Shown here: piece after piece, positions 8,956-57,611 of the stretch
Position numbering within the stretch: position 1 is the stretch's first letter
Layout of the letters: every line of letters begins with the position of its first letter
Origin: Auanema rhodensis
Taxonomy: Eukaryota; Animalia; Nematoda
Direction: 5' to 3'
NCBI GenBank assembly: GCA_964057225.1
Contig: OZ059894.1
Span: forward strand, 11,284,001-11,348,000
Length of the DNA stretch: 64,000 nt
Position numbers and translations under genes: made by a program
Notes under the pieces: model-generated
Told to the model about the DNA's origin: nothing
The model's database searches: none
What the model saw: the letters and a program-made list of their open reading frames with translations, nothing else

Positions 8956-9097
8956 AATGTCATATTCTTCATTATCAGTTATATCACTCTAAATCTTGTT
9001 GTTAATAGATACGACCACAAAGAAAACAACAGGAACAGTAACAATAACAAAAAAAATTTTTTTTTCACCTATGTGTCTAAAGGTTAGCCATGTATCC

Positions 9098-9161
<64 letters not shown>

Positions 9162-10343: not shown

Positions 10344-10527
10344 TGGGCCGTTCCCGCCAGCAGTGCAAGAGCGGGTCGACCCGTGAGGTGGAGCTAGCAA
10401 GCCAGCATCTACCTCAAGTCTCAAAAATCGGTTAACCTTATTGTGAACCAATGGAACACATATCGAAGGTTAATTCGATAAGAACGATTACTACACTTTG
10501 ATCTTAGCCAAAAGGCCGAGAAGCGAT
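10344..10527 (-). ncRNA. U2: U2 snRNA gene
   Basis: Matches 5727-5910. Confidence 0.96.
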
Positions 10528-10969
10528 ACAGCATAGCCATGAGTATCAAAGACATCAAGCAAATGTATCGTACTTGTTACGAGTGCACTCTCTCATTTGA
10601 ATATAAAAGTGTGGTTTGACAATCTTGACTGTACAGGTCATAAATGGCTCATATAAACTGTGGATTTACTCAACTTTTGGACTTATTTTTTTCTTATTCG
10701 AAGCGCTGCACTTTTTTCTATTCTTTTTATTCAAATACTTGTATATAGTTTTATATGTACGGTTGCAAAGTTTCCGAATATTTTATATATTTTTATACAA
10801 TAATTAGGAGAAGGTTAATACAATGAAATCTCCCAACTTTACAGTGTTTGTATTGCTTACAGTATCTAGAACAACCACTCTTGTAATATTAGAGCACATA
10901 TCAATCAACAACTTTTTCTAGTTATCAAAGCTTTTTTATTTCTTCAAGATATTTCAAATAAAATATAAA

Positions 10970-12987: not shown

Positions 12988-15706
12988 ATGGTTTATTGAA
13001 TAACTAATGTTATGAAACAATAAATAACCAATAAAAAAGAGCCCAGAATCGGGGAGACGGTATTACCAGTACAACTTAAAACAGCAAGTGATTAAAAAGT
13101 ACAAAATAAAACACATTACCAACAGAGGCTAAAACGACTCAAGAGTCGGGGGAGTGGGTTAAAAAAAGTAATGAATAACAAAAAAAATGAATAATAAAGC
13201 AGAACAGTGAAAAGTAAATATCAAGTGCCGCTATGATCAAACAATTTGAGTGCCTACGGCAATGGTGTTAAAAATAAACAACAAAATACATGTACCAATG
13301 AAGGTCAGAAAGAGAGAAAGAAAAAAGACAAAAATAAGTAATACAAAAAGTAAAAAATATATTACAATCAAATCACAAACAAGTCAATGGATAATTTCTT
13401 CTTCATACTGCCTTACACCAGAAACATGTTCCACGTAGATATTCCTGGCCCACTTGATGGTATCGGCGACGACGAGCTTCTCCATTAGCCGGTTGTAGTG
13501 GCTGCTGATCTTGAGTGATCGGAGGGCTTGTACGTTGAGCGGGTCCATAGTTCCAAGCATTCCTACGACATACGCTTCTACACTAGTCTTATAACCAAGA
13601 CATTGGTATTGGCTGGCTATGTCAGCATATTTCCTCTCCTTTATCATACGCGCGGCTATCATGGCTTGTCGGCGGTTTTCATAGCTCACTGTAACATCAA
13701 CGATACTACAGTGTTTTGCGTCATGATCGACCACTACTATGTCAGGTCGGAGTGTACTATTAATGCCAGGAAGAGGCTGGTTAGTGTAAACTTCTCCGTT
13801 TTTAGGCTCTGGCAGGGCTTTGATAAGACGGTCCACGATGTTGTTGTGGCGGAGTTGGATTGCTCTCGTGTGAAAGTGGCAGTGTCCAAGAACATGTGCA
13901 GCAGTTTCGTTGGGGTAACTACACCTGCGGCACTGTTTGTTTCCTTCTCCGTGTCTTCTACAGCCATTGAGCTGGAGAGTATTAAGTCGAGCCTTGTGGA
14001 TGAATCGCCAATCAGCAAACCGTATGAAATCTCCCTTCGCCATAAAGTGATTGGACGCTTTGTTGAGCATTGTGACATCAAAGACTTTCCCTTGATCCGG
14101 TTTTTGAAGAAGGATCCGAAGGTCTTTCAGCCATAATGCACGTCGCAGGCTTCTGTGGCATAGTGAAGGTGTTAACAGTTGGTTGTTTAGATTGAGTTCT
14201 AAACCACTTTCGAGGCATGTCCAGTTAGCGTTGATGAGTTTCTTGAGTTGACGCATCGCTACTCTTACTCTAGTCCAGATGGAGGAAACATCAGATGTTT
14301 CGGTGTCGAAAATGCCATCAACGGAACCGTTGTAATATGCAGCTGTCTCATCGTTACTGGCTTGACGTTTAATCCTTTTTGATGCTACTTTTATTGAGTC
14401 TTGATGCGCAATATCAGCTACTACAAGATCAGATGACTTCAAAAGTTGGTAGGCATGAGTGACTTCACAGACGTCTGACAGGTGTTGGAGTCGAGAGAGA
14501 CCAAGTCCGCCGTAGTTAGTTGGCAGGTAGATTGGTTCAGCACTGGCGTTTGGAGGATAGTGCATCCATCTACGGGCACAGCGTTTGAGTTCTTTGTCAA
14601 AGGCGACTAGTTTACTCTTTGGGACGTGGCCATTCGTCATATGAAAATTAAGGCAGGGCATCAGGAAGGTGCGTACTGCGTCAGCTTTCTGCCATTCAGC
14701 CAGTAAGGATTTGTCAATTTTTTCCAAGTGTTGACTCATGATATTCACTGTTGGAACCGCAGACTTATGTAAATGCATTCCAGTAGGGATTCCCAGGTGG
14801 GAGTAGCTGTCAAATTTGCTGAGAGCGGGTAGAAAGCAGCTCTGAAGCATGTATGAGGCTGTTGATATTTTCCCTTTGTCGATCGTCAAAGTGGCGCATT
14901 TCGCTGGTTTGAAGGTCAAGCCTGTGAAATTAGCCGCATTTGATGCTGCGTCCAACATTTTCTGTAGATCTTCTGATGATGAGGAGACCAGGGCAAGGTC
15001 ATCGGCGTACGCTAGCACAGCGATGTTGTGATTGTGTAGCTTATAGCCTGTAGAGGTTTCCAAGATGGTTTTAATTAGAGGTTCAATGGCAAGGTTGAAC
15101 AGGATCGGAGATAGTGGGGATCCTTGTAACACACCTGCGTGAACTGGAATGGTCGAAGTGAGTCCGGAGCCTGTCTGGATTCTTGTAGAGGCATCTGTGT
15201 ATAGAGCTCGTACTCGGGATATTGAGGCTTCAGCCATTCCTGACCATCTTAGAACGTCTAGCAGAGTTTCGTGTGGCAGCGATCCAAAAGCGTTTGCGAG
15301 ATCAAGCCAAGCAATTGCAATTTTCTCACGTTTACGTTTAGCGTCTGCAATGGTACTTTGCAACAAAAAGTTGTGTTCCATGCATCCAGCTTTGGCCACA
15401 AAGCCCTTTTGGGAGGGAGAAAGTCTTTTTTCTGCTCTTGCCCATGTTAGCAGTCGATGCGTAAGACAAGCTGAGTACGTCTTACCAATTGTGCACGAAA
15501 GTGCTATTGGTCGCCAGTTGTTAATGTCAGCTTTATCACCTTTCTTATGGATGAGGACGGTGGTCGACTCTTTCCAGGAAAAAGGGATGTGTCCTAGCTT
15601 GTGTACGGTGTTAAATATCGCTGCTAATATGTGACCTCCTTGGTCAAATTTCTTCCAGTGCGAGTATCGAAGTCCATCAGCTCCTGGAGCCGTATCGCTG
15701 CAACGT
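12988..15706 (-). mobile_element. 5'-truncated Utopia-like copy (2.7 kb)
   Basis: Colinear with 1605-4323; ends at ...gctgcaacgt. Confidence 0.94.
13384..15706 (-). pseudogene. Truncated RT-RLE coding region lacking the N-terminus
   Basis: ORF track 13384-15399 matches the C-terminal 671 aa. Confidence 0.9.
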
Positions 15707-15767
15707 AGTAATCGTTCTTATCGAATTAACCTTCGATATGTGTTCCATTGGTTCACAATAAGGTTAA
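15705..15767 (+). pseudogene. U2: U2 nt 34-96 heading the inverted element
   Basis: gtagtaatcgttc...aaggttaa, then tggctaaatcg. Confidence 0.9.
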
Positions 15768-18700
15768 TGGCTAAATCGATATTGCAACTGTACTACGTAA
15801 GTCTTTAGATCTGCTAGAGATGGAGCAAGGGCTTTACAAGCTAAAGGTGCCTCTTCAGAGCCCTTTTTCTTGTTCAATCTGCGCTCCTATTCCGCGATCC
15901 TACTCAGACCACAATGGTCTCGTCCGCCATCTTCGGAGAGAACATGAGGTCGGAGTAGAATTTGAGTGCCGTGCCTGTGGCCTCACCAGCAATCTGAAGG
16001 CCGTTAAAAGCCATCAGAAAAAAGCTGAAGGATGCCTCCGCATCATAGAGGAAACTGTGGTGATCTCACCTCTATCTCCGAGAGAGCCCAGTTCCCGCCC
16101 TATATTGCGGAGGATCAGGAACACCCGCCCACCAGGCACAAGGACGACCACCCCGCCCGTGGAGGAGCGTACAATGGAGGAAACATCATCCAGTGGACAG
16201 GAACAAGGATCTCCATCAACGGTACGCTTGTTTGAGGCCCCAATTCTGGACTTGTCCCCAGAGGCCGAAGTTTCCCCCCTTCCGCGAGAGAGTGAAATAT
16301 TCAACGAGATCAGGGTTCCGAGTACAGAACCATCTTTTGCCGACCCTGATCCGAATAGAAACTCTGAAAATATTTGGGTGGATAGAATTAAAAAGGTAGT
16401 GTGCAAAAGTGAGCTCGAGCAGGTCCTGGAAGAGTTGATAGACACAATCAGAAAGTCTCTTGACATTATGATCAAAGTTCCCAACTTCCGACAAAGGCGC
16501 CGACCACACACACAACCTGAGGAAGACCAAAAAACCCAGGCGATGAAGATCCAGAAGCTTTGGAGGGCCAACAAGAAGAAAGCCTTTCGACAACTGCTCG
16601 GAGAACAAAGTGAAACCTGCACCATACCATCTGCAGATGTTGAAAAACACTTCCTTTCTGTTCACAGCAGTCAAGGCCCAGCCCTCCCCATCACAGTCAC
16701 CAGACCGGATTTGCCAACTAGTACCGACCCATTAGAAGGTGTTTTCACCCCTTTGGAAGTCTGGGAACGCATACGACGTTGCAGCGATACGGCTCCAGGA
16801 GCTGATGGACTTCGATACTCGCACTGGAAGAAATTTGACCAAGGAGGTCACATATTAGCAGCGATATTTAACACCGTACACAAGCTAGGACACATCCCTT
16901 TTTCCTGGAAAGAGTCGACCACCGTCCTCATCCATAAGAAAGGTGATAAAGCTGACATTAACAACTGGCGACCAATAGCACTTTCGTGCACAATTGGTAA
17001 GACGTACTCAGCTTGTCTTACGCATCGACTGCTAACATGGGCAAGAGCAGAAAAAAGACTTTCTCCCTCCCAAAAGGGCTTTGTGGCCAAAGCTGGATGC
17101 ATGGAACACAACTTTTTGTTGCAAAGTACCATTGCAGACGCTAAACGTAAACGTGAGAAAATTGCAATTGCTTGGCTTGATCTCGCAAACGCTTTTGGAT
17201 CGCTGCCACACGAAACTCTGCTAGACGTTCTAAGATGGTCAGGAATGGCTGAAGCCTCAATATCCCGAGTACGAGCTCTATACACAGATGCCTCTACAAG
17301 AATCCAGACAGGCTCCGGACTCACTTCGACCATTCCAGTTCACGCAGGTGTGTTACAAGGATCCCCACTATCTCCGATCCTGTTCAACCTTGCCATTGAA
17401 CCTCTAATTAAAACCATCTTGGAAACCTCTACAGGCTATAAGCTACACAATCACAACATCGCTGTGCTAGCGTACGCCGATGACCTTGCCCTGGTCTCCT
17501 CATCATCAGAAGATCTACAGAAAATGTTGGACGCAGCATCAAATGCGGCTAATTTCACAGGCTTGACCTTCAAACCAGCGAAATGCGCCACTTTGACGAT
17601 CGACAAAGGGAAAATATCAACAGCCTCATACATGCTTCAGAGCTGCTTTCTACCCGCTCTCAGCAAATTTGACAGCTACTCCCACCTGGGAATCCCTACT
17701 GGAATGCATTTACATAAGTCTGCGGTTCCAACAGTGAATATCATGAGTCAACACTTGGAAAAAATTGACAAATCCTTACTGGCTGAATGGCAGAAAGCTG
17801 ACGCAGTACGCACCTTCCTGATGCCCTGCCTTAATTTTCATATGACGAATGGCCACGTCCCAAAGGGAAAGTCTTTGATGTCACAATGCTCAACAAAGCG
17901 TCCAATCACTTTATGGCGAAGGGAGATTTCATACGGTTTGCTGATTGGCGATTCATCCACAAGGCTCGACTTAATACTCTCCAGCTCAATGGCTGTAGAA
18001 GACACGGAGAAGGAAACAAACAGTGCCGCAGGTGTAGTTACCCCAACGAAACTGCTGCACATGTTCTTGGACACTGCCACTTTCACACGAGAGCAATCCA
18101 ACTCCGCCACAACAACATCGTGGACCGTCTTATCAAAGCCCTGCCAGAGCCTAAAAACGGAGAAGTTTACACTAACCAGCCTCTTCCTGGCATTAATAGT
18201 ACACTCCGACCTGACATAGTAGTGGTCGATCATGACGCAAAACACTGTAGTATCGTTGATGTTACAGTGAGCTATGAAAACCGCCGACAAGCCATGATAG
18301 CCGCGCGTATGATAAAGGAGAGGAAATATGCTGACATAGCCAGCCAATACCAATGTCTTGGTTATAAGACTAGTGTAGAAGCGTATGTCGTAGGAATGCT
18401 TGGAACTATGGACCCGCTCAACGTACAAGCCCTCCGATCACTCAAGATCAGCAGCCACTACAACCGGCTAATGGAGAAGCTCGTCGTCGCCGATACCATC
18501 AAGTGGGCCAGGAATATCTACGTGGAACATGTTTCTGGTGTAAGGCAGTATGAAGAAGAAATTATCCATTGACTTGTTTGTGATTTGATTGTAATATATT
18601 TTTTACTTTTTGTATTACTTATTTTTGTCTTTTTTCTTTCTCTCTTTCTGACCTTCATTGGTACATGTATTTTGTTTTTTATTTTTAACACTATTGCCGT

Positions 18701-18968
18701 AGGCACTCAAATTGTTTGATCATAGCGGCACTTGATATTTACTTTTCACTGTTCTGCTTTATTATTCATTTTTTTTGTTATTCATTACTTTTTTTAACCC
18801 ACTCCCCCGACTCTTGAGTCGTTTTAGCCTCTGTTGGTAATGTGTTTTATTTTGTACTTTTTAATCACTTGCTGTTTTAAGTTGTACTGGTAATACCGTC
18901 TCCCCGATTCTGGGCTCTTTTTTATTGGTTATTTATTGTATCATAACATTAGTTATTCAATAAACCAT
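15768..18968 (+). mobile_element. Utopia-like copy with both ends intact and a 526-bp internal deletion
   Basis: Junction cccaaag/ggaaagtc near 17865 with AAG microhomology. Confidence 0.94.
15820..18572 (+). pseudogene. Frameshifted retrotransposon ORF
   Basis: ORFs 15820-18219 and 17886-18572; 2753 nt versus 3279 nt in the intact copy. Confidence 0.92.
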
Positions 18969-19115
18969 TAATCGTTCTTATCGAATTAACCTTCGATATG
19001 TGTTCCATTGGTTCACAATAAGGTTAACCGATTTTTGAGACTTGAGGTAGATGCTGGCTTGCTAGCTCCACCTCACGGGTCGACCCGCTCTTGCACTGCT
19101 GGCGGGAACGGCCCA
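18969..19115 (+). pseudogene. U2: U2 3' part (nt 38-184), inverted
   Basis: aataaaccat/taatcgttctt junction. Confidence 0.93.
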
Positions 19116-20293
19116 TTCCCTCAGGGAAAGAATGTAACAATAAGAATGAAAATCGTGTAGTACACATGGAAATTCAACTTGAGTGACGCTTATGACGATG
19201 CTGCAGCATACGAACGGTTTAGAAATGACTATACGATCAAAGATGTACCTCTCATTTGTTCACAAACCTTCTATTTTCATGGCTTTCTTATAATTTTTTG
19301 TCATACTTATGTACTACCTGGTAATTCTGTATTTACATTTATGTTTATTCATGTCTTTGCTGCCTCTACGCTTTTGTTACTTTTATAGTTTAATATTGTA
19401 GTTTTTCGGAACAAACATTCTCTACGTCAATAAATTGTTCTTATCGAATTAATCTTCAATATGTGTTCTATTACTATACTGGTAATGTATATATCTCGTT
19501 TAGTGCGTGGGGGCCTATTCGGGTGGTTTCTATTATGCATATGCATGTTGTTTAGACTTTTAAGACGTATTTCAACAAGTTAGAACGATTAAACATGTTT
19601 GCAGAGTGATCGGATGAGGTTGAAACGAGTAATGAGAAAAAAAGTAGGTAAGGGGGGACCCTTGTGTGAGAAAATGTTCAAAAAAAAGTTGTTTTTGTTT
19701 TCGTTTTGTTTTCATTTTTCAAAAATTTACAGTTTTTATAAAAATAATTCTTCTTTCTACAGTAGATTGTAAATTTCATGAAAAAAAATATAGGGAATCA
19801 AAAGTTACATTAGGGTCCCGAATACGGGACATTTTTATATGTGTAAAAACGGTCCAGTTTTAACACAAGGGTTTTCCGGTCTATTATAAGGTAAAACACA
19901 GCTTTTTAAACCTCCGTAGCGTAATGAGAAATGATGATTTCGTGAATGTTAAAGTTTTCTATCATAGTTCTCTATAGTATCTACGTACATATGAAGAAAA
20001 AATAGAAAGAAATTTTTCTGGAAGCAAGTTTCATTGAGCGTTCCGTATAAGGAACATTATGATAAAAATTATAAGGGGGTAAAACATATCATTGTTAACC
20101 AAGACGTCTGAAAATAAAATCAACAACAGGAACAGTAACAAATGAAATGCCCAAACTTTACAGTGTTCGAGTTATTTACAGTATCTAAGACTACCTCTGT
20201 CGTGTTATTAGAGCAAACATTCGATTAACAACAACTTTTTTTTAGTTATCAAAGCTTTTTTATTTCTTCAAAAAATTTCAAATAAAATATAAA

Positions 20294-29364: not shown

Positions 29365-31339
29365 ATGGTTTATTGAATAACTAATGTTATGAAACAATAA
29401 ATAACCAATAAAAAAGAGCCCAGAATCGGGGAGACGGTATTACCAGTACAACTTAAAACAGCAAGTGATTAAAAAGTACAAAATAAAACACATTACCAAC
29501 AGAGGCTAAAACGACTCAAGAGTCGGGGGAGTGGGTTAAAAAAAGTAATGAATAACAAAAAAAATGAATAATAAAGCAGAACAGTGAAAAGTAAATATCA
29601 AGTGCCGCTATGATCAAACAATTTGAGTGCCTACGGCAATAGTGTTAAAAATAAAAAACAAAATACATGTACCAATGAAGGTCAGAAAGAGAGAAAGAAA
29701 AAAGACAAAAATAAGTAATACAAAAAGTAAAAAATATATTACAATCAAATCACAAACAAGTCAATGGATAATTTCTTCTTCATACTGCCTTACACCAGAA
29801 ACATGTTCCACGTAGATATTCCTGGCCCACTTGATGGTATCGGCGACGACGAGCTTCTCCATTAGCCGGTTGTAGTGGCTGCTGATCTTGAGTGATCGGA
29901 GGGCTTGTACGTTGAGCGGGTCCATAGTTCCAAGCATTCCTACGACATACGCTTCTACACTAGTCTTATAACCAAGACATTGGTATTGGCTGGCTATGTC
30001 AGCATATTTCCTCTCCTTTATCATACGCGCGGCTATCATGGCTTGTCGGCGGTTTTCATAGCTCACTGTAACATCAACGATACTACAGTGTTTTGCGTCA
30101 TGATCGACCACTACTATGTCAGGTCGGAGTGTACTATTAATGCCAGGAAGAGGCTGGTTAGTGTAAACTTCTCCGTTTTTAGGCTCTGGCAGGGCTTTGA
30201 TAAGACGGTCCACGATGTTGTTGTGGCGGAGTTGGATTGCTCTCGTGTGAAAGTGGCAGTGTCCAAGAACATGTGCAGCAGTTTCGTTGGGGTAACTACA
30301 CCTGCGGCACTGTTTGTTTCCTTCTCCGTGTCTTCTACAGCCATTGAGCTGGAGAGTATTAAGTCGAGCCTTGTGGATGAATCGCCAATCAGCAAACCGT
30401 ATGAAATCTCCCTTCGCCATAAAGTGATTGGACGCTTTGTTGAGCATTGTGACATCAAAGACTTTCCCTTGATCCGGTTTTTGAAGAAGGATCCGAAGGT
30501 CTTTCAGCCATAATGCACGTCGCAGGCTTCTGTGGCATAGTGAAGGTGTTAACAGTTGGTTGTTTAGATTGAGTTCTAAACCACTTTCGAGGCATGTCCA
30601 GTTAGCGTTGATGAGTTTCTTGAGTTGACGCATCGCTACTCTTACTCTAGTCCAGATGGAGGAAACATCAGATGTTTCGGTGTCGAAAATGCCATCAACG
30701 GAACCGTTGTAATATGCAGCTGTCTCATCGTTACTGGCTTGACGTTTAATCCTTTTTGATGCTACTTTTATTGAGTCTTGATGCGCAATATCAGCTACTA
30801 CAAGATCAGATGACTTCAAAAGTTGGTAGGCATGAGTGACTTCACAGACGTCTGACAGGTGTTGGAGTCGAGAGAGACCAAGTCCGCCGTAGTTAGTTGG
30901 CAGGTAGATTGGTTCAGCACTGGCGTTTGGAGGATAGTGCATCCATCTACGGGCACAGCGTTTGAGTTCTTTGTCAAAGGCGACTAGTTTACTCTTTGGG
31001 ACGTGGCCATTCGTCATATGAAAATTAAGGCAGGGCATCAGGAAGGTGCGTACTGCGTCAGCTTTCTGCCATTCAGCCAGTAAGGATTTGTCAATTTTTT
31101 CCAAGTGTTGACTCATGATATTCACTGTTGGAACCGCAGACTTATGTAAATGCATTCCAGTAGGGATTCCCAGGTGGGAGTAGCTGTCAAATTTGCTGAG
31201 AGCGGGTAGAAAGCAGCTCTGAAGCATGTATGAGGCTGTTGATATTTTCCCTTTGTCGATCGTCAAAGTGGCGCATTTCGCTGGTTTGAAGGTCAAGCCT
31301 GTGAAATTAGCCGCATTTGATGCTGCGTCCAACATTTTC
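29365..31339 (-). mobile_element. 5'-truncated Utopia-like copy (1975 bp; ORF remnant 29761-31339, YADD absent)
   Basis: Ends aacattttc/acggagg, fused to spacer. Confidence 0.94.
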
Positions 31340-34792: not shown

Positions 34793-36767
34793 ATGGTTTA
34801 TTGAATAACTAATGTTATGAAACAATAAATAACCAATAAAAAAGAGCCCAGAATCGGGGAGACGGTATTACCAGTACAACTTAAAACAGCAAGTGATTAA
34901 AAAGTACAAAATAAAACACATTACCAACAGAGGCTAAAACGACTCAAGAGTCGGGGGAGTGGGTTAAAAAAAGTAATGAATAACAAAAAAAATGAATAAT
35001 AAAGCAGAACAGTGAAAAGTAAATATCAAGTGCCGCTATGATCAAACAATTTGAGTGCCTACGGCAATAGTGTTAAAAATAAAAAACAAAATACATGTAC
35101 CAATGAAGGTCAGAAAGAGAGAAAGAAAAAAGACAAAAATAAGTAATACAAAAAGTAAAAAATATATTACAATCAAATCACAAACAAGTCAATGGATAAT
35201 TTCTTCTTCATACTGCCTTACACCAGAAACATGTTCCACGTAGATATTCCTGGCCCACTTGATGGTATCGGCGACGACGAGCTTCTCCATTAGCCGGTTG
35301 TAGTGGCTGCTGATCTTGAGTGATCGGAGGGCTTGTACGTTGAGCGGGTCCATAGTTCCAAGCATTCCTACGACATACGCTTCTACACTAGTCTTATAAC
35401 CAAGACATTGGTATTGGCTGGCTATGTCAGCATATTTCCTCTCCTTTATCATACGCGCGGCTATCATGGCTTGTCGGCGGTTTTCATAGCTCACTGTAAC
35501 ATCAACGATACTACAGTGTTTTGCGTCATGATCGACCACTACTATGTCAGGTCGGAGTGTACTATTAATGCCAGGAAGAGGCTGGTTAGTGTAAACTTCT
35601 CCGTTTTTAGGCTCTGGCAGGGCTTTGATAAGACGGTCCACGATGTTGTTGTGGCGGAGTTGGATTGCTCTCGTGTGAAAGTGGCAGTGTCCAAGAACAT
35701 GTGCAGCAGTTTCGTTGGGGTAACTACACCTGCGGCACTGTTTGTTTCCTTCTCCGTGTCTTCTACAGCCATTGAGCTGGAGAGTATTAAGTCGAGCCTT
35801 GTGGATGAATCGCCAATCAGCAAACCGTATGAAATCTCCCTTCGCCATAAAGTGATTGGACGCTTTGTTGAGCATTGTGACATCAAAGACTTTCCCTTGA
35901 TCCGGTTTTTGAAGAAGGATCCGAAGGTCTTTCAGCCATAATGCACGTCGCAGGCTTCTGTGGCATAGTGAAGGTGTTAACAGTTGGTTGTTTAGATTGA
36001 GTTCTAAACCACTTTCGAGGCATGTCCAGTTAGCGTTGATGAGTTTCTTGAGTTGACGCATCGCTACTCTTACTCTAGTCCAGATGGAGGAAACATCAGA
36101 TGTTTCGGTGTCGAAAATGCCATCAACGGAACCGTTGTAATATGCAGCTGTCTCATCGTTACTGGCTTGACGTTTAATCCTTTTTGATGCTACTTTTATT
36201 GAGTCTTGATGCGCAATATCAGCTACTACAAGATCAGATGACTTCAAAAGTTGGTAGGCATGAGTGACTTCACAGACGTCTGACAGGTGTTGGAGTCGAG
36301 AGAGACCAAGTCCGCCGTAGTTAGTTGGCAGGTAGATTGGTTCAGCACTGGCGTTTGGAGGATAGTGCATCCATCTACGGGCACAGCGTTTGAGTTCTTT
36401 GTCAAAGGCGACTAGTTTACTCTTTGGGACGTGGCCATTCGTCATATGAAAATTAAGGCAGGGCATCAGGAAGGTGCGTACTGCGTCAGCTTTCTGCCAT
36501 TCAGCCAGTAAGGATTTGTCAATTTTTTCCAAGTGTTGACTCATGATATTCACTGTTGGAACCGCAGACTTATGTAAATGCATTCCAGTAGGGATTCCCA
36601 GGTGGGAGTAGCTGTCAAATTTGCTGAGAGCGGGTAGAAAGCAGCTCTGAAGCATGTATGAGGCTGTTGATATTTTCCCTTTGTCGATCGTCAAAGTGGC
36701 GCATTTCGCTGGTTTGAAGGTCAAGCCTGTGAAATTAGCCGCATTTGATGCTGCGTCCAACATTTTC
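34793..36767 (-). mobile_element. 5'-truncated Utopia-like copy, same truncation as 29365-31339
   Basis: Identical junction and 526-aa ORF remnant. Confidence 0.94.
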
Positions 36768-37715: not shown

Positions 37716-39690
37716 ATGGTTTATTGAATAACTAATGTTATGAAACAATAAATAACCAATAAAAAAGAGCCCAGAATCGGGGAGACGGTATTACCAGTAC
37801 AACTTAAAACAGCAAGTGATTAAAAAGTACAAAATAAAACACATTACCAACAGAGGCTAAAACGACTCAAGAGTCGGGGGAGTGGGTTAAAAAAAGTAAT
37901 GAATAACAAAAAAAATGAATAATAAAGCAGAACAGTGAAAAGTAAATATCAAGTGCCGCTATGATCAAACAATTTGAGTGCCTACGGCAATAGTGTTAAA
38001 AATAAAAAACAAAATACATGTACCAATGAAGGTCAGAAAGAGAGAAAGAAAAAAGACAAAAATAAGTAATACAAAAAGTAAAAAATATATTACAATCAAA
38101 TCACAAACAAGTCAATGGATAATTTCTTCTTCATACTGCCTTACACCAGAAACATGTTCCACGTAGATATTCCTGGCCCACTTGATGGTATCGGCGACGA
38201 CGAGCTTCTCCATTAGCCGGTTGTAGTGGCTGCTGATCTTGAGTGATCGGAGGGCTTGTACGTTGAGCGGGTCCATAGTTCCAAGCATTCCTACGACATA
38301 CGCTTCTACACTAGTCTTATAACCAAGACATTGGTATTGGCTGGCTATGTCAGCATATTTCCTCTCCTTTATCATACGCGCGGCTATCATGGCTTGTCGG
38401 CGGTTTTCATAGCTCACTGTAACATCAACGATACTACAGTGTTTTGCGTCATGATCGACCACTACTATGTCAGGTCGGAGTGTACTATTAATGCCAGGAA
38501 GAGGCTGGTTAGTGTAAACTTCTCCGTTTTTAGGCTCTGGCAGGGCTTTGATAAGACGGTCCACGATGTTGTTGTGGCGGAGTTGGATTGCTCTCGTGTG
38601 AAAGTGGCAGTGTCCAAGAACATGTGCAGCAGTTTCGTTGGGGTAACTACACCTGCGGCACTGTTTGTTTCCTTCTCCGTGTCTTCTACAGCCATTGAGC
38701 TGGAGAGTATTAAGTCGAGCCTTGTGGATGAATCGCCAATCAGCAAACCGTATGAAATCTCCCTTCGCCATAAAGTGATTGGACGCTTTGTTGAGCATTG
38801 TGACATCAAAGACTTTCCCTTGATCCGGTTTTTGAAGAAGGATCCGAAGGTCTTTCAGCCATAATGCACGTCGCAGGCTTCTGTGGCATAGTGAAGGTGT
38901 TAACAGTTGGTTGTTTAGATTGAGTTCTAAACCACTTTCGAGGCATGTCCAGTTAGCGTTGATGAGTTTCTTGAGTTGACGCATCGCTACTCTTACTCTA
39001 GTCCAGATGGAGGAAACATCAGATGTTTCGGTGTCGAAAATGCCATCAACGGAACCGTTGTAATATGCAGCTGTCTCATCGTTACTGGCTTGACGTTTAA
39101 TCCTTTTTGATGCTACTTTTATTGAGTCTTGATGCGCAATATCAGCTACTACAAGATCAGATGACTTCAAAAGTTGGTAGGCATGAGTGACTTCACAGAC
39201 GTCTGACAGGTGTTGGAGTCGAGAGAGACCAAGTCCGCCGTAGTTAGTTGGCAGGTAGATTGGTTCAGCACTGGCGTTTGGAGGATAGTGCATCCATCTA
39301 CGGGCACAGCGTTTGAGTTCTTTGTCAAAGGCGACTAGTTTACTCTTTGGGACGTGGCCATTCGTCATATGAAAATTAAGGCAGGGCATCAGGAAGGTGC
39401 GTACTGCGTCAGCTTTCTGCCATTCAGCCAGTAAGGATTTGTCAATTTTTTCCAAGTGTTGACTCATGATATTCACTGTTGGAACCGCAGACTTATGTAA
39501 ATGCATTCCAGTAGGGATTCCCAGGTGGGAGTAGCTGTCAAATTTGCTGAGAGCGGGTAGAAAGCAGCTCTGAAGCATGTATGAGGCTGTTGATATTTTC
39601 CCTTTGTCGATCGTCAAAGTGGCGCATTTCGCTGGTTTGAAGGTCAAGCCTGTGAAATTAGCCGCATTTGATGCTGCGTCCAACATTTTC
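37716..39690 (-). mobile_element. 5'-truncated Utopia-like copy, same truncation
   Basis: Identical junction; 2923 bp after the previous copy. Confidence 0.94.
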
Positions 39691-49221: not shown

Positions 49222-50403
49222 ACAGTAAAAAGTCCAATCAAGAGAGAAATTTTTTCAACACATAGTTGTTTTTTTTTTAAATATCATTGTTTTTCCTCAT
49301 AACTCGGTTTAAACTCGTTCTAACCCGTTGAAATACGTCTAGAAAGTCTTTATAACATGCATATGTATGATAGAACTTCATATTTATTGTAATAGAAAAT
49401 TTTATTTTCAGACGTCTTGGTTAACAATGATATGTTTTACCCCCTTATAATTTTTATCATAATGTTCCTTATACGGAACGCTCAATGAAACTTGCTTCCA
49501 GAAAAATTTCTTTCTATTTTTTCTTCATATGTACGTAGATACTATAGAGAACTATGATAGAAAACTTTAACATTCACGAAATCATCATTTCTCATTACGC
49601 TACGGAGGTTTAAAAAGCTGTGTTTTACCTTATAATAGACCGGAAAACCCTTGTGTTAAAACTGGACCGTTTTTACACATATAAAAATGTCCCGTATTCG
49701 GGACCCTAATGTAACTTTTGATTCCCTATATTTTTTTTCATGAAATTTACAATCTACTGTAGAAAGAAGAATTATTTTTATAAAAACTGTAAATTTTTGA
49801 AAAATGAAAACAAAACGAAAACAAAAACAACTTTTTTTTGAACATTTTCTCACACAAGGGTCCCCCCTTACCTACTTTTTTTCTCATTACTCGTTTCAAC
49901 CTCATCCGATCACTCTGCAAACATGTTTAATCGTTCTAACTTGTTGAAATACGTCTTAAAAGTCTAAACAACATGCATATGCATAATAGAAACCACCCGA
50001 ATAGGCCCCCACGCACTAAACGAGATATATACATTACCAGTATAGTAATAGAACACATATTGAAGATTAATTCGATAAGAACAATTTATTGACGTAGAGA
50101 ATGTTTGTTCCGAAAAACTACAATATTAAACTATAAAAGTAACAAAAGCGTAGAGGCAGCAAAGACATGAATAAACATAAATGTAAATACAGAATTACCA
50201 GGTAGTACATAAGTATGACAAAAAATTATAAGAAAGCCATGAAAATAGAAGGTTTGTGAACAAATGAGAGGTACATCTTTGATCGTATAGTCATTTCTAA
50301 ACCGTTCGTATGCTGCAGCATCGTCATAAGCGTCACTCAAGTTGAATTTCCATGTGTACTACACGATTTTCATTCTTATTGTTACATTCTTTCCCTGAGG
50401 GAA

Positions 50404-50550
50404 TGGGCCGTTCCCGCCAGCAGTGCAAGAGCGGGTCGACCCGTGAGGTGGAGCTAGCAAGCCAGCATCTACCTCAAGTCTCAAAAATCGGTTAACCTTA
50501 TTGTGAACCAATGGAACACATATCGAAGGTTAATTCGATAAGAACGATTA
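50404..50550 (-). pseudogene. U2: U2 3' part (nt 38-184), interrupted
   Basis: Same 3' junction. Confidence 0.93.
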
Positions 50551-53500
50551 ATGGTTTATTGAATAACTAATGTTATGATACAATAAATAACCAATAAAAA
50601 AGAGCCCAGAATCGGGGAGACGGTATTACCAGTACAACTTAAAACAGCAAGTAATTAAAAAGTACATAATAAGACACATTGCCAACAGAGGCTAAAACGA
50701 CTCAAGAGTCGGGGGAGTGGGTTAAAAAAAAATGAACAAAAAAAATGAATATTAAAGCAGAACAATGAGAAATCAAGTGCCGCTATGATCAAACAATTTG
50801 AGTGCCTACGGCAATGATGTTAAAAATAAACAACAAAATACATGTACCAATGAAGGTCAGAAAGAAAGAAACAAAAGACAAAATAAGTAATACAAAAAGT
50901 AAATACATTACAATCAAATCACAAACAAGTCAATTGATAATTTCTTCTTCATATTGCCTTACACCAGAAACATGTTCCACGTAGATATTCCTGGCCCACT
51001 TGATGGTATCGGCGACGACGAGCTTCTCCATTAGCCGGTTGTAGTGGCTGCTGATCTTGAGTGATCGGAGGGCTTGTCCGTTGAGCGGGTCCATAGTTCC
51101 AAGCATTCCTACGACATACGCTTCTACACTAGTCTTATAACCAAGACATTGGTATTGGCTGGCTATGTCAGCATATTTCCTCTCCTTTATCATACGCGCG
51201 GCTATCATGGCTTGACGGCGGTTTTCATAGCTCACTGTAACATCAACGATACTACAGTGTTTTGCGTCATGATCGACCACTACTATGTCAGGTCGGAGTG
51301 TACTATTAATGCCAGGAAGAGGCTGGTTAGTGTAAACTTCTCCGTTTTTAGGCTCTGGCAGGGCTTTGATAAGACGGTCCACGATGTTGTTGTGGCGGAG
51401 TTGGATTGCTCTCGTGTGAGAGTGGCAGTGTCCAAGAACATGTGCAGCAGTTTCGTTGGAGTAACTACACCTGCGGCACTGTTTGTTTCCTTCTCCGTGT
51501 CTTCTACAGCCATTGAGCTGGAGAGTATTGAGTCGAGCCTTGTGGATGAATCGCCAATCAGCAAACCGTATGAAATCTCCCTTCGCCATAAAGTGATTGG
51601 ACGCTTTGTTGAGCATTGTGACATCAAAGACTTTCCCTTGATCCGGTTTTTAAAGAAGGATCCGAAGGTCTTTCAGCCATAATGCACGTCGCAGGCTTCT
51701 GTGGCATAGTGAAGGTGTTAACAGTTGGTTGTTTAGATTGAGTTCTAAACCACTTTCGAGGCATGTCCAGTTAGCGTTGATGAGTTTCTTGAGTTGACGC
51801 ATCGCTACTCTTACTCTAGTCCAGATGGAGGAAACATCAGATGTTTCGGTGTCGAAAATGCCATCAACGGAACCGTTGTAATATGCAGCTGTCTCATCGT
51901 TACTGGCTTGACGTTTAATCCTTTTTGATGCTACTTTTTTTGAGTCTTGATGCGCAATATCAGCTACTACAAGATCAGATGACTTCAAAAGTTGGTAGGC
52001 ATGAGTGACTTCACAGACGTCTGACAGGTGTTGGAGTCGAGAGAGACCAAGTCCGCCGTAGTTAGTTGGCAGGTAGATTGGTTCAGCACTGGCGTTTGGA
52101 GGATAGTGCATCCATCTACGGGCACAGCGTTTGAGTTCTTTGTCAAAGGCGACTAGTTTACTCTTTGGGACGTGGCCATTCGTCATATGAAAATTAAGGC
52201 AGGGCATCAGGAAGGTGCGTACTGCGTCAGCTTTCTGCCATTCAGCAAGTAAGGATTTGTCAATTTTTTCCAAGTGTTGACTCATAATATTCACTGTTGG
52301 AACCGCAGACTTATGTAAATGCATTCCAGTAGGGATTCCCAGGTGGGAGTAGCTGTCAAATTTGCTAAGAGCGGGTAGAGAGGAGCTCTGTAGCATGTAT
52401 GAGGCTGTTGATATTTTCCCTATGTCGATCGTCAAGGTGGCGCATTTCGCTGGTTTGAAGGTCAAGCCTGTGAAATTAGCCGCATTTGATGCTGCGTCCA
52501 ACATTTTCTGTAGATCTTCTGATGATGAGGAGACCAGGGCAAGGTCATCGGCGTACGCTAGCACAGCGATGTTGTGGTTGTGTAGCTTATAGCCTGTAGA
52601 GGTTTCCAAGATGGTTTTAATTAGAGGTTCAATGGCAAGGTTGAACAGGATCGGAGATAGTGGGGATCCTTGTAACACACCTGCGTGAACTGGAATGGTC
52701 GAAGTGAGTCCGGAGCCTGTCTGGATTCTTGTAGAGGCATCTGTGTATAGAGCTCGTACTCGGGATATTGAGGCTTCAGCCATTCCTGACCATCTTAGAA
52801 CGTCTAGCAGAGTTTCGTGTGGCAGCGATCCAAAAGCGTTTGCGAGATCAAGCCAAGCAATTGCAATTTTCTCACGTTTACGTTTAGCGTCCGCAATGGT
52901 ACTTTGCAACATAAAGTTGTGTTCCATGCATCCAGCTTTGGCCACAAAGCCCTTTTGGGAGGGAGAAAGTCTTTTTTCTGCTCTTGCCCATGTTAGCAGT
53001 CGATGCGTAAGACAAGCTGAGTACGTCTTACCAATTGTGCACGAAAGTGCTATTGGTCGCCAGTTGTTAATGTCAGCTTTATCACCTTTCTTATGGATGA
53101 GGACGGTGGTCGACTCTTTCCAGGAAAAAGGGATGTGTCCTAGCTTGTGTACGGTGTTAAATATCGCTGCTAATATGTGACCTCCTTGGTCAAATTTCTT
53201 CCAGTGCGAGTATCGAAGTCCATCAGCTCCTGGAGCCGTATCGCTGCAACGTCGTATGCGTTCCCAGACTTCCAAAGGGGTGAAAACACCTTCTAGTGGG
53301 TCGGTACTAGCTGGCAAATCCGGTCTGGTGACTGTGATGGGGAGGGCTGGGCCTTGACTGCTGTGAACAGAAAGGAAGTGTTTTTCAACCTCTGCAGATG
53401 GTATGGTGCAGGTTTCACTTTGTTCTCCGAGCAGTTGTCGAAAGGCTTTCTTCTTGTTGGCCCTCCAAAGCTTCTGGAGCTTCATCGCCTGGGTTTTTTG

Positions 53501-54260
53501 GTCTTCCTCAGGTTGTGTGTGTGGTCGGCGCCTTTGTCGGAAGTTGGGAACTTTGATCATAATGTCAAGAGACTTTCTGATTGTGTCTACCAACTCTTCC
53601 AGGACCTGCTCGAGCTCACTTTTGCACACTACCTTTTTAATTCTATCCACCCAAATATTTTCAGAGTTTCTATTCGGATCAGGGTCGGCAAAAGATGGTT
53701 CTGTACTCGGAACCCTGATCTCGTTGAATATTTCACTCTCTCGCGGAAGGGGGGAAACTTCGGCCTCTGGGGACAAGTCCAGAATTGGGGCCTCAAACAA
53801 GCGTACCGTTGATGGAGATCCTTGTTCCTGTCCACTGGATGATGTTTCCTCCATTGTACGCTCCTCCACGGGCGGGGTGGTCGTCCTTGTGCCTGGTGGG
53901 CGGGTGTTCCTGATCCTCCGCAATATAGGGCGGGAACTGGGCTCTCTCGGAGATAGAGGTGAGATCACCACAGTTTCCTCTATGATGCGGAGACATCCTT
54001 CAGCTTTTTTCTGATGGCTTTTAACGGCCTTCAGATTGCTGGTGAGGCCACAGGCACGGCACTCAAATTCTACTCTGACCTCATGTTCTCTCCGAAGATG
54101 GCGGACGAGACCATTGTGGTCTGAGTAGGATCGCGGAATAGGAGCGCAGATTGAACACGAAAAAGGGCTCTGAAGAGGCACCTTTAGCTTGTAAAGCCCT
54201 TGCTCCATCTCTAGCAGATCTAAAGACTTACGTAGTACAGTTGCAATATCGATTTAGCCA
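50551..54260 (-). mobile_element. Full-length, more diverged Utopia-like copy with a nonsense mutation
   Basis: Both ends intact; 3' UTR indels; several amino-acid changes relative to the 1605 copy. Confidence 0.95.
50930..54208 (-). pseudogene. Retrotransposon ORF split by CAA>TAA at 51650-51652 (codon 853), which removes the endonuclease
   Basis: ORFs 51650-54208 and 50930-51616 are in the same frame; total 3279 nt. Confidence 0.93.
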
Positions 54261-54319
54261 TTAACCTTATTGTGAACCAATGGAACACATATCGAAGGTT
54301 AATTCGATAAGAACGATTA
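54261..54319 (-). pseudogene. U2: U2 nt 38-96 between two tandem insertions
   Basis: Exact 59-bp U2 segment. Confidence 0.92.
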
Positions 54320-55237
54320 ATGGTTTATTGGATAACTAATGTTATGAAACAATAAATAACCAATAAAAAAGAGCCCAGAATCGGGGAGACGGTATTACCA
54401 GTACAACTTAAAACAACAAGTGATTAAAAAGTACAAAATAAAACACATTACCAACAGAGGCTAAAACGACTCAAGAGTCGGGGGAGTGGGTTAAAAAATT
54501 ACTGAAGCCCGAAGGCAGCGAGAAATAGTAAGGATACTACCTGCACTGAGTGCGTCGTATCATAAAAAAAGAGATAGCTAATGGGCAAGTTGAAGAGCTT
54601 GAAATTAACAATGACGTCACTAGAAGTAAAGTTTTCTATCTGCAGCTGCGGGTAAAGAGGGTCAGCGTAAGCAGAATTCAATTCTACCAACAATTAGTGG
54701 GAACATTGAGAGAACAGATGAAGGAGGAAATTGTAACTTCAAGTAAAATAGATTATATCTTCAGCTGCGGGTAAAGAGAGTCAGCTTTGTACAGATTACT
54801 AGTTTACATAAGAAGTGGTAACATTTCAAAAAAGGAGCACAACATAAAAAACGAGACTACGGACTATGAGGTAAATGTTATCATTGTCTGGATCGATGAT
54901 TCGGCATTTGATTGCAGCTGCGGATTGAGTGGATCAGCTTGCATGGCGTCCGCATTCGACATCAGGGAAAATGATGAGTTTCTTGAGGTCCGGCTCGGCG
55001 GGCTGTTATGTCCTATTCCCTGTTGATGGTGTTGTTGTCCTTGAGCTTGTTCTTCTTCCCAGAAAAAAAAAACTGTGAAGCTGAAGAGTCCTATTAAACG
55101 TCTTTAAACGCAAGATTAATAAGAAGCTACTACAGCTAACACAGGACCGCCTCAAGGCCTGGTAGATCAACCAGTGTTGCTTCAATCACCAAGTATTGCG
55201 GCCTGGGCCCTTGGATCAATTCACAACACCAGTATAG
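54320..55237 (-). mobile_element. Putative non-autonomous passenger retroelement: 739-bp unique body plus the 179-bp Utopia-like 3' tail
   Basis: 3' junction at U2 nt 37/38; 54320-54498 matches the element 3' UTR; 54499-55237 occurs once in the window and has no credible ORF. Confidence 0.7.
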
Positions 55238-55316
55238 CAATGGAACACATATCGAAGGTTAATTCGATAAGAACGATTACTACACTTTGATCTTAGCCAA
55301 AAGGCCGAGAAGCGAT
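55238..55316 (-). pseudogene. U2: U2 nt 1-79 with normal upstream flank, heading the passenger insert
   Basis: caatggaacac...gagaagcgat followed by the usual acagcatagcc. Confidence 0.92.
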
Positions 55317-55758
55317 ACAGCATAGCCATGAGTATCAAAGACATCAAGCAAATGTATCGTACTTGTTACGAGTGCACTCTCTCATTTGAATATAAAAGTG
55401 TGGTTTGACAATCTTGACTGTACAGGTCATAAATGGCTCATATAAACTGTGGATTTACTCAACTTTTGGACTTATTTTTTTCTTATTCGAAGCGCTGCAC
55501 TTTTTTCTATTCTTTTTATTCAAATACTTGTATATAGTTTTATATGTACGGTTGCAAAGTTTCCGAATATTTTATATATTTTTATACAATAATTAGGAGA
55601 AGGTTAATACAATGAAATCTCCCAACTTTACAGTGTTTGTATTGCTTACAGTATCTAGAACAACCACTCTTGTAATATTAGAGCACATATCAATCAACAA
55701 CTTTTTCTAGTTATCAAAGCTTTTTTATTTCTTCAAGATATTTCAAATAAAATATAAA

Positions 55759-56429: not shown

Positions 56430-57611
56430 ACAGTAAAAAGTCCAATCAAGAGAGAAATTTTTTCAACACATAGTTGTTTTTTTTTTAAATATCATTGTTT
56501 TTCCTCATAACTCGGTTTAAACTCGTTCTAACCCGTTGAAATACGTCTAGAAAGTCTTTATAACATGCATATGTATGATAGAACTTCATATTTATTGTAA
56601 TAGAAAATTTTATTTTCAGACGTCTTGGTTAACAATGATATGTTTTACCCCCTTATAATTTTTATCATAATGTTCCTTATACGGAACGCTCAATGAAACT
56701 TGCTTCCAGAAAAATTTCTTTCTATTTTTTCTTCATATGTACGTAGATACTATAGAGAACTATGATAGAAAACTTTAACATTCACGAAATCATCATTTCT
56801 CATTACGCTACGGAGGTTTAAAAAGCTGTGTTTTACCTTATAATAGACCGGAAAACCCTTGTGTTAAAACTGGACCGTTTTTACACATATAAAAATGTCC
56901 CGTATTCGGGACCCTAATGTAACTTTTGATTCCCTATATTTTTTTTCATGAAATTTACAATCTACTGTAGAAAGAAGAATTATTTTTATAAAAACTGTAA
57001 ATTTTTGAAAAATGAAAACAAAACGAAAACAAAAACAACTTTTTTTTGAACATTTTCTCACACAAGGGTCCCCCCTTACCTACTTTTTTTCTCATTACTC
57101 GTTTCAACCTCATCCGATCACTCTGCAAACATGTTTAATCGTTCTAACTTGTTGAAATACGTCTTAAAAGTCTAAACAACATGCATATGCATAATAGAAA
57201 CCACCCGAATAGGCCCCCACGCACTAAACGAGATATATACATTACCAGTATAGTAATAGAACACATATTGAAGATTAATTCGATAAGAACAATTTATTGA
57301 CGTAGAGAATGTTTGTTCCGAAAAACTACAATATTAAACTATAAAAGTAACAAAAGCGTAGAGGCAGCAAAGACATGAATAAACATAAATGTAAATACAG
57401 AATTACCAGGTAGTACATAAGTATGACAAAAAATTATAAGAAAGCCATGAAAATAGAAGGTTTGTGAACAAATGAGAGGTACATCTTTGATCGTATAGTC
57501 ATTTCTAAACCGTTCGTATGCTGCAGCATCGTCATAAGCGTCACTCAAGTTGAATTTCCATGTGTACTACACGATTTTCATTCTTATTGTTACATTCTTT
57601 CCCTGAGGGAA

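What the first reader, a model, noticed from the sequence alone, without database searches (positions are those of the whole stretch)
54320..55316. Candidate U2-headed non-autonomous retroelement parasitising the U2-specific element
Seen: U2 nt 1-79 head (a different breakpoint from nt 96, also short of the Sm site), 739-bp non-coding body, and 179-bp near-identical element tail, inserted precisely at nt 37/38 with the promoter intact. Its 5' junction is fossilised in all units. Known: SINEs and R2 SIDEs borrow a partner's 3' tail. Inference: a SINE/SIDE-like family living only in U2 genes and using the external snRNA promoter, giving a three-tier host/parasite/hyperparasite system. It also shows the machinery can deliver unrelated cargo.
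Basis: partly seen in the sequence, partly recalled or inferred. Interest (0 to 1): 0.85.

Follow-up and report, generated by a model that had tools for sequence, protein, structure and literature searches.

The report
Non-coding rider at Utopia's U2 site
One U2 snRNA gene in this nematode-type U2/5S gene array carries a 918-base non-coding insert that ends in the last 179 bases of the resident U2-specific retrotransposon (Utopia type) and sits at that element's exact insertion point. It is most likely a passenger copied by Utopia's enzyme, though only one full copy and one old scar could be examined here.

Summary
On the minus strand the order is: intact U2 upstream region, U2 nt 1-79, a 739-bp body, a 179-bp tail, U2 nt 38-96, an older Utopia copy with a broken reading frame, then U2 nt 38-190.

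- **Body:** unique in the window and non-coding, with no match to Utopia, the array unit, Pfam or Rfam.
- **Tail:** differs from the ends of six of the seven Utopia copies at 2 of 179 positions.
- **Older occurrence:** every array unit holds a decayed scar with the same junction (U2 nt 79 followed by the first 10-15 body bases). The head-body junction has therefore arisen at least twice.
- **Leader:** the leader length is element-specific (79 for the rider, 96 for Utopia). One Utopia copy starts at U2 nt 2/3 next to non-U2 DNA. This argues that the U2 leader is part of the RNA, made from the U2 promoter, and is not a target duplication.

**Best reading (0.6):** a non-autonomous rider mobilised in trans by Utopia.

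**Not shown:** a second full copy, transcription, or whether the 179-nt tail is the family's usual tail or a one-off swap.

The scan has already flagged similar 783-865-bp riders elsewhere in this genome. I could not check those notes. I rate this a new variant of a known kind, of moderate interest.

The parts
55317..55400 (-). U2 upstream (promoter-side) flank, unchanged
   Evidence: 100% identical to the same stretch of all 14 canonical units (query positions 1-84).
55280..55316 (-). U2 nt 1-37, the upstream half of the target
   Evidence: Identical to canonical U2.
55238..55279 (-). U2 nt 38-79, the duplicated part of the U2 leader carried by the rider
   Evidence: 100% identical to U2 nt 38-79, and repeated at 54319..54278 after the tail.
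54499..55237 (-). 739-bp non-coding body of the rider
   Evidence: Unique in the window. No similarity to Utopia or the array unit, even with word size 7 or nhmmer. ORFs are 79 aa or shorter. No Pfam, Rfam or tRNA match. Folding energy is ordinary, z = -0.96.
54906..54938 (-). 33-nt motif, copy 3 of 3 (the others are at 54753-54785 and 54634-54666)
   Evidence: Direct-repeat family D1: 100%, 91% and 70% identity, spaced 119 and 153 nt apart. Each copy holds a CAGCTG palindrome.
54320..54498 (-). 179-nt tail, equal to the 3' end of the Utopia 3' UTR
   Evidence: Alignment A1: two private substitutions against all seven Utopia tails. Homology starts abruptly, with a ragged 8 nt further upstream. 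The tail folds into three hairpin domains, z = -3.36. An AATAAA hexamer lies 5 nt before the 3' junction.
54261..54319 (-). U2 nt 38-96, the remaining leader of the downstream Utopia copy and the 3' flank of the rider
   Evidence: 100% identical to U2 nt 38-96. The same nt-96 junction is seen in the other full-length copies at 5332 and 15767.
50551..54260 (-). Resident Utopia-type element, an older copy with an interrupted reading frame
   Evidence: 98.8% identical to the copy at 1605-5331, while the other copies are 99.7-99.9% alike. Its ORF is split into 852 aa and 228 aa, against one ORF of 1092 aa at 2001-5279.
50398..50550 (-). U2 nt 38-190, the downstream half of the original target gene
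   Evidence: unit positions 122 onward.
57244..57294 (-). Fossil junction, one example of the copy present in every unit: U2 nt 39-79 plus the first 10-15 body bases, preceded by tail-like AT-rich sequence
   Evidence: About 20 hits at 90% identity. No further body similarity follows. The upstream similarity to the tail is weak, reached by 4 of 200 shuffles.

Best explanation
The stretch is a non-autonomous, non-coding retroelement (a 'rider') that uses the reverse transcriptase and endonuclease of the resident U2-specific Utopia-type element.

**Proposed cycle**
1. The U2 promoter of an occupied gene transcribes U2 nt 1-79, the body and the tail, and probably runs on into the downstream U2 sequence.
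2. The Utopia protein binds the structured 3' tail.
3. The protein nicks the bottom strand of another U2 gene between nt 37 and 38. It primes cDNA synthesis there, exactly at the end of the tail.
4. The end of the cDNA, which is complementary to the U2 leader, pairs with the upstream half of the target. This rebuilds promoter-U2 1-79 in front of the new copy, so the copy is again under a U2 promoter and again offers a target site.

In this locus the rider landed in the rebuilt U2 1-96 leader of an older, now defective Utopia copy.

**Shown:** the anatomy, the shared tail, the identical site, an earlier occurrence of the same head-body junction, and leader lengths specific to each element.

**Inferred:** trans-mobilisation, transcription from the U2 promoter, annealing of the leader, and family status.
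For: **Tail and junctions**
- The tail matches six of the seven Utopia 3' ends at 177 of 179 positions. It abuts U2 nt 38 exactly as all seven Utopia copies do.
- The body has no coding capacity and no relation to Utopia.
- The 5' side is an uninterrupted promoter flank plus U2 1-79.

**An earlier occurrence**
- Every unit carries the same nt-79/body junction at 90% identity. That is an older and independent occurrence.

**The leader belongs to the RNA**
- The leader ends at nt 79 in the rider (twice) and at nt 96 in Utopia (at 5332, 15767 and 54261). One enzyme making staggered cuts should give a single duplication length.
- The Utopia copy at 5427 starts at U2 nt 2/3, after a run of extra T's, and is joined to spacer position about 559 rather than to a promoter. 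This is what a cDNA that reached an RNA 5' end at the U2 start site would leave.
- Utopia's ORF starts 52 nt after the leader. That leaves little room for a promoter of its own.

**The tail is not a local copy**
- The rider's tail has two private substitutions and is not a copy of its neighbour's tail, from which it differs at 7 positions. Local duplication is therefore unlikely.

**Wider presence and precedent**
- Words from the body and tail are held in 15 runs from 4 studies under 3 organism labels.
- R2 offers precedents. Only the 3' UTR is needed for trans-copying, in the non-autonomous SIDEs (PMC3414825). Target-derived 5' RNA leaders give uniform 5' junctions (PMC3774820).
Against: - Only one full copy was seen.
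- No genome was held, and the body was found nowhere else that I could search.
- Homology to Utopia starts abruptly and is near-identical. This fits a recent template switch as well as it fits a long-lived partnership.
- Unchecked notes from other windows describe riders that share only about 40 tail bases with Utopia. The 179-nt tail here may therefore be atypical.
- Tandem arrays spread variants by unequal exchange, so the fossil found in all units counts as one event.
Confidence: 0.6

Rival explanations
1. This is a one-off chimera. During one integration, the Utopia reverse transcriptase copied the last 179-188 nt of a Utopia RNA. It then jumped to a second RNA that already carried a U2 1-79 leader, namely a rider of another type or its progenitor. 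On this reading the copy is a dead-end hybrid, and the 179-nt tail is not a family trait.
For: The homology boundary is abrupt and the tail is near-identical. Template jumps by a related enzyme are documented for R2 (PMC3414825). No second copy with this tail is seen in 64 kb. Unchecked notes on 783-865-bp riders report about 40 shared tail bases.
Against: The tail has two substitutions absent from all seven Utopia tails, while currently similar Utopia copies differ by about 0.2%. At that rate about 0.36 differences are expected, so P is roughly 0.05. Even this scenario needs a pre-existing U2(1-79)-body transcript, so a rider lineage still exists, and the fossil supports that.
Confidence: 0.22
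2. The arrangement is a DNA-level rearrangement. Unequal exchange or gene conversion between array units, or with an old degenerate copy, assembled it without any new retrotransposition.
For: The array shows many rearrangements: an inverted Utopia pair, a triplicated deletion unit and a unit with a single 5S gene. The fossil offers 41 bp of U2-like homology in every unit.
Against: Both junctions are exactly those expected of target-primed reverse transcription: the tail end against nt 38, and a continuous U2 1-79. The U2 pieces are 100% canonical, whereas the fossil differs at 4 of 41 positions. The body is not present next to any fossil in the window.
Confidence: 0.1
3. The U2 nt 38-79 repeat is an ordinary target-site duplication made by staggered cuts, and the element's RNA has no U2 leader and does not depend on the U2 promoter.
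For: The product cannot be told apart from a 42-bp duplication. Utopia families of reptiles are reported to make 20-bp duplications (PMC4640811).
Against: The duplication would be 42 bp for the rider but 59 bp for Utopia, although the same enzyme made both. The Utopia copy at 5427 carries U2 nt 2/3-96 without a U2 target upstream.
Confidence: 0.08

Closest known systems
Utopia, the U2 snRNA gene-specific non-LTR retrotransposons of the NeSL clade (Kojima and Jurka 2015, PMC4640811)
   Same: The partner element here has N-terminal zinc fingers, an RT domain, and a C-terminal CCHC motif with a PD..D-type endonuclease motif. It inserts in the branch-site-binding region of U2 with a precise 3' junction. 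Its nearest named relatives come from taxa listed as Utopia hosts, such as Dendroctonus, Daphnia and turtles. Tandem insertion in U2 was reported for Nasonia.
   Different: The paper reports no non-coding partner: 'non-autonomous' occurs 0 times in it, and no held paper combines the terms. Arthropod families are said to make no duplication, whereas here a long U2 leader of 96 nt is rebuilt. The rider itself encodes nothing.
R2 SIDEs, short internally deleted non-autonomous elements of the 28S-specific R2 (Eickbush and Eickbush 2012, PMC3414825)
   Same: Both are non-autonomous elements confined to the same multicopy RNA-gene site as a restriction-like-endonuclease retrotransposon. Both keep the partner's 3' end, are co-transcribed with the target gene, and are rare.
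   Different: SIDEs consist of R2's own 5' ribozyme plus its 3' end. Here the body is unrelated to the partner, and no ribozyme is found. The 5' end is set by the host gene's transcription start rather than by self-cleavage.
SINEU, SINEs with U1- or U2-derived heads in crocodilians (Kojima 2015, PMC4494074)
   Same: Both have a U2-derived 5' head, internal T runs that exclude Pol III, and a suspected dependence on an upstream promoter.
   Different: SINEU elements are under 500 bp, dispersed (preferring a Mariner family), and mobilised by Tx1 elements that carry an AP-type endonuclease. This element is about 0.9-1 kb, sits only at the U2 site, and its head is continuous with a real U2 promoter.
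R2 RNAs with 28S-derived 5' leaders (Eickbush, Burke and Eickbush 2013, PMC3774820)
   Same: In both, target-gene sequence at the 5' end of the RNA is proposed to let the cDNA pair with the upstream target and give uniform 5' junctions.
   Different: In R2 the leader is up to 36 nt and is set by ribozyme cleavage. Here it is 79 or 96 nt and starts at the gene's transcription start.

Membership tests
Utopia (the autonomous partner, not the rider) | One ORF with N-terminal zinc fingers, an RT domain, and a C-terminal zinc finger plus restriction-like endonuclease | tested here: met
   RVT_1 scores E = 5e-28 at residues 371-593. C2H2-type motifs near the N terminus, and CCHC plus PD...D...K motifs near the C terminus, were read by eye in the translation.
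Utopia (the autonomous partner, not the rider) | A precise 3' junction at one site in the 5' part of U2 | tested here: met
   All seven 3' ends abut U2 nt 38. The site splits the GTAG/TA of the branch-site-binding region, which matches the target words quoted in PMC4640811.
Utopia (the autonomous partner, not the rider) | RT groups with Utopia in a phylogeny | not tested
   Only similarity ranking was done. The best hits are 55-56% identical metagenome proteins, followed by Globodera, Centruroides, Dendroctonus, Daphnia and turtles. No tree was built.
Non-autonomous partner of a non-LTR retrotransposon (general) | No coding capacity, and a 3' end shared with an autonomous element in the same genome | tested here: met
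Non-autonomous partner of a non-LTR retrotransposon (general) | Several independent insertions with the same ends | tested here: inconclusive
   One full copy plus one older junction scar. Other copies are known only from unchecked notes. No genome was held.
Non-autonomous partner of a non-LTR retrotransposon (general) | Transcribed | not testable with these tools
Four holders are only guessed to be RNA runs.
Classical SINE | A head derived from tRNA, 7SL or 5S with an internal Pol III promoter | tested here: not met
   No tRNA. No Rfam family other than U2 pieces. The body holds T10 and T7 runs.
SIDE (short internally deleted element) | Built from the 5' and 3' ends of the autonomous partner by internal deletion | tested here: not met
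   Only the 3' 179-188 nt and the U2 leader are shared. The 739-bp body has no similarity to Utopia.
SINEU | An snRNA-derived head on a short, dispersed retroposon | tested here: not met
   The head criterion is met (U2 1-79). The element is about 0.9-1 kb and sits at the U2 site itself, so it is not dispersed within the 64 kb examined.

The most novel reading that the evidence does not exclude
U2 genes of this nematode may host a small community of promoter-less retroelements built on one plan. The plan is a U2 leader supplied by the host snRNA promoter, which doubles as a 5' homing arm and rebuilds the target; then any cargo; then an exchangeable Utopia 3' module. This copy would be a rider that has recently taken a longer Utopia tail, which would show module swapping in action. 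It would be a natural counterpart of engineered templates for site-specific insertion, which combine a homology arm, a cargo and a 3' UTR.
Probability: 0.3. Interest if true: 0.7.

Novelty: new variant of a known kind. Interest (0 to 1): 0.55.

Why it matters
Site-specific retrotransposons with restriction-like endonucleases are being developed as tools for gene insertion, so the minimal RNA features needed for copying and for clean 5' joining matter.

- **Cargo:** if confirmed, this rider shows that a Utopia enzyme accepts unrelated cargo carrying about 180 nt of its 3' UTR.
- **Target size:** a U2 fragment ending at nt 96 is still a usable target, because the rider sits in the leader of a Utopia copy.
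- **Leader:** a host-derived 5' leader can give seamless upstream junctions.
- **Precedent:** it would be only the second kind of non-autonomous element known to share a multicopy RNA-gene niche with such a retrotransposon, after the R2 SIDEs.
- **Promoter:** it would also be a case of a mobile element that relies on an snRNA-type promoter.

Tried and rejected
**Searches and routes that gave nothing**
- **Whole-genome search for the body:** no genome is held for this window.
- **Reads:** Depth, joints and RNA starts are therefore unknown. They were used only in local scripts, and all later searches stopped at 55283.
- **Protein route to other assemblies:**
  - The 79-aa body ORF is not on record and has no homologue.
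  - Six other body ORFs and ten Utopia-region ORFs are not in the collection.
  - The nearest Utopia proteins are only 55-56% identical.
  - Their two contigs, L001 and L002, show no U2, body or tail similarity.
- **Metagenome scans:** the head-body junction and the tail-U2 junction both gave 0 hits.

**Ideas tested and not supported**
- **Body as a deletion derivative of Utopia, or as spacer DNA:** rejected.
- **Body as an mRNA or a known RNA:** no support.
- **A 'backwards copy of the U2 5' domain' at body nt 50-90:**
  - Locally unusual: 1 of 300 shuffles reach its score, and the duplex energy has z of about -2.9.
  - Not significant over the whole body, where 98 of 300 shuffles do as well. 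I leave it as unproven.
- **Extension of the fossil into the body beyond about 15 nt:** none found.
- **Similarity of the spacer upstream of the fossil to the tail or the end of the body:** marginal only.

Full report
**1. Setting**

The window is a head-to-tail array of 2.48-kb units, all on the minus strand. Each unit has one U2 snRNA gene and usually two 5S rRNA genes. There are 14 intact U2 genes and about 30 5S genes.

Seven U2 genes are interrupted between nt 37 and 38 by an element of about 3.7 kb. Its best copy carries a 1092-aa ORF at 2001-5279 with these features:
- an RT domain (Pfam RVT_1, E = 5e-28);
- N-terminal zinc-finger motifs;
- a C-terminal CCHC motif plus a PD..D..K endonuclease motif, read in the translation.

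Its nearest relatives are 55-56% identical metagenome proteins. After those come proteins of Globodera, Centruroides, Dendroctonus, Daphnia and turtles, and several of these taxa are listed as Utopia hosts (PMC4640811). The domain plan, the target gene and the precise 3' junction match Utopia as defined in that paper. I built no tree.

**2. The observation**

The minus strand reads:
- promoter-side flank, 55400..55317, identical to all canonical units;
- U2 nt 1-79, 55316..55238, identical to canonical U2;
- a 739-bp body, 55237..54499;
- a 179-bp tail, 54498..54320;
- U2 nt 38-96, 54319..54261;
- a Utopia copy, 54260..50551;
- U2 nt 38-190, 50550..50398.

**3. The body**

- It occurs once in the 64 kb.
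- It has no detectable similarity to Utopia or to the array unit on either strand, even with 7-base words or nhmmer.
- Its longest ORF is 79 aa. The ORFs hit no Pfam family.
- Rfam finds only the flanking U2 pieces, and there is no tRNA.
- It contains three copies of a 33-nt motif with a CAGCTG core, 119 and 153 nt apart.
- It holds T runs of up to 10, which speak against Pol III transcription.
- Its overall folding energy is ordinary, z = -0.96.

**4. The tail**

- It matches the last 179 nt of the 396-nt Utopia 3' UTR. Homology begins abruptly, with a ragged 8 nt further upstream.
- In alignment A1 it differs from six of the seven Utopia tails at two positions, and no Utopia tail in the window has the rider's base at either position. 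It differs from its neighbour's tail at seven positions.
- It folds into three hairpin domains, z = -3.36.
- An AATAAA hexamer lies 5 nt before the junction.

**5. Is the U2 leader a target duplication or part of the RNA?**

Three observations favour the RNA.
- **Leader length is element-specific.** It is nt 79 for the rider, both here and in the fossil. It is nt 96 for Utopia, at 5332, 15767 and 54261. One enzyme cutting with a fixed stagger should give one length.
- **One Utopia copy carries the leader without a target upstream.** The copy whose leader ends at 5427 is not joined to a promoter. It is joined to spacer position about 559 of the preceding unit, through a run of extra T's followed by U2 from nt 2 or 3. 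A breakpoint at the very first bases of U2 is what a cDNA reaching the 5' end of an RNA started at the U2 transcription start would leave.
- **Utopia has little room for its own promoter.** Its ORF begins only 52 nt after the leader.

This parallels R2 lineages in which a 28S-derived 5' leader on the RNA is thought to pair with the target and give uniform junctions (PMC3774820). Both leaders stop before the Sm site, which lies at nt 99-106 of this U2.

**6. One-off or recurrent?**

Every unit carries a 51-bp stretch, about 310 bp behind its U2 gene, that is 90% identical to U2 nt 39-79 plus the first ten body bases.
- 13 of the first 15 body bases match. After that, similarity is lost.
- The scar is preceded by AT-rich sequence with weak likeness to the tail.
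- A ten-of-ten match exactly at the junction is not chance.

The nt-79/body junction therefore existed earlier, in a tail/U2-piece/body arrangement like the one seen today. It then spread through the array with the unit, so it counts as one event.

Even the template-switch rival needs an RNA that already had U2 1-79 fused to this body. The rider is thus a lineage and not a first-time accident.

I could not see a second full copy. No genome is held.

Words from the body and tail are held by 15 public runs from 4 studies under 3 organism labels. Four of these runs are only guessed to be RNA. This shows persistence, not copy number.

**7. Order of events at this locus**

The downstream Utopia copy is the most diverged in the window. 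It is 98.8% identical to the others, which are 99.7-99.9% alike, and its ORF is split into 852 aa and 228 aa.

The piece between the rider's tail and that copy is exactly U2 nt 38-96. The simplest history has two steps:
1. Utopia entered a U2 gene and rebuilt U2 1-96 in front of itself.
2. Later the rider entered that leader at nt 37/38.

It follows that a U2 fragment ending at nt 96 is still a sufficient target.

**8. Earlier notes of this scan (leads, not evidence)**

Other windows of the same genome were noted to hold non-coding inserts of 783-788 bp and 865 bp at the same U2 nucleotide. These were said to share about 40 tail bases with Utopia, and one was said to be transcribed. One note calls the unit fossil the tail-to-head junction of the 788-bp element.

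If that is right, this body starts like that element, and the present copy (739 + 179 bp) is a long-tailed relative or a tail-swapped hybrid. I could not read those sequences.

A note on a backwards copy of the U2 5' domain behind the leader has a possible counterpart at body nt 50-90.
- Locally it is unusual: 1 of 300 shuffles reach its score, and the duplex energy is -33.9 against -23.3 ± 3.6 kcal/mol.
- Over the whole body it is not significant.

**9. Comparison with known systems**

- **It works like an R2 SIDE.** It shares the partner's niche and 3' end and is co-transcribed with the target (PMC3414825). It is not built from the partner's own ends, so it is not a SIDE.
- **It resembles SINEU** in having a U2 head and no Pol III promoter (PMC4494074). 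Unlike SINEU it is long, site-specific, and joined to a real U2 promoter.
- **No prior report found.** The Utopia paper mentions no non-coding partner, and no held paper combines Utopia, non-autonomous and U2 snRNA.

**10. Verdict**

The best reading is a non-autonomous rider of Utopia with a host-supplied U2 leader (0.6). The rivals are:
- a one-off tail-swap chimera (0.22);
- a DNA-level rearrangement (0.1);
- the view that the U2 repeat is a plain target duplication (0.08). This concerns the mechanism only and is not exclusive of the others.

I rate it a new variant of a known kind, with interest 0.55. The scan had already noted the same kind of element elsewhere in this genome.

Noticed in passing
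window 5300-5470 (-): The 5' end of the intact Utopia copy is joined to spacer position about 559 of the preceding unit. The join runs through about 10 extra T's followed by U2 from nt 2/3, not through a promoter. About 2 kb of the array unit is missing there. It looks like a full-length cDNA joined upstream by microhomology at a T run.
   Followed up: partly
window 12988-18968: Two Utopia copies lie head to head as an inverted pair. The join is near 15704/15705, where a 5'-truncated minus-strand copy meets U2 nt 34-96 of a plus-strand copy. The flanking array units are inverted as well (18969-20120).
   Followed up: no
window 29365-31339, 34793-36767, 37716-39690: The same 5'-truncated Utopia copy (526-aa ORF), joined to unit position 1070, appears three times. 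One truncated insertion with an upstream deletion was amplified as a higher-order repeat.
   Followed up: no
window 50930-54208 (-): The Utopia copy beside the rider has its reading frame split into 852 aa and 228 aa. It also has four small deletions confined to the 3' UTR, and it is the most diverged copy in the window (98.8%).
   Followed up: partly
window 8478-10611: One array unit is about 350 bp shorter and carries a single 5S gene instead of two. The two 5S repeats of a normal unit are 91-92% identical over 361 bp, flanks included.
   Followed up: no
window 55148-55188 (-), body nt 50-90: This segment resembles the reverse complement of about the first 43 nt of U2 and is predicted to pair with the leader. 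It is locally unusual but not significant over the whole body.
   Followed up: partly
L001 (JGI metagenome contig, 4586 bp) and L002 (ENA contig, 3637 bp): The closest Utopia-like proteins available (55-56% identity) lie on short metagenome contigs. By local BLAST these contigs show no U2, 5S, tail or body similarity to the window.
   Followed up: partly
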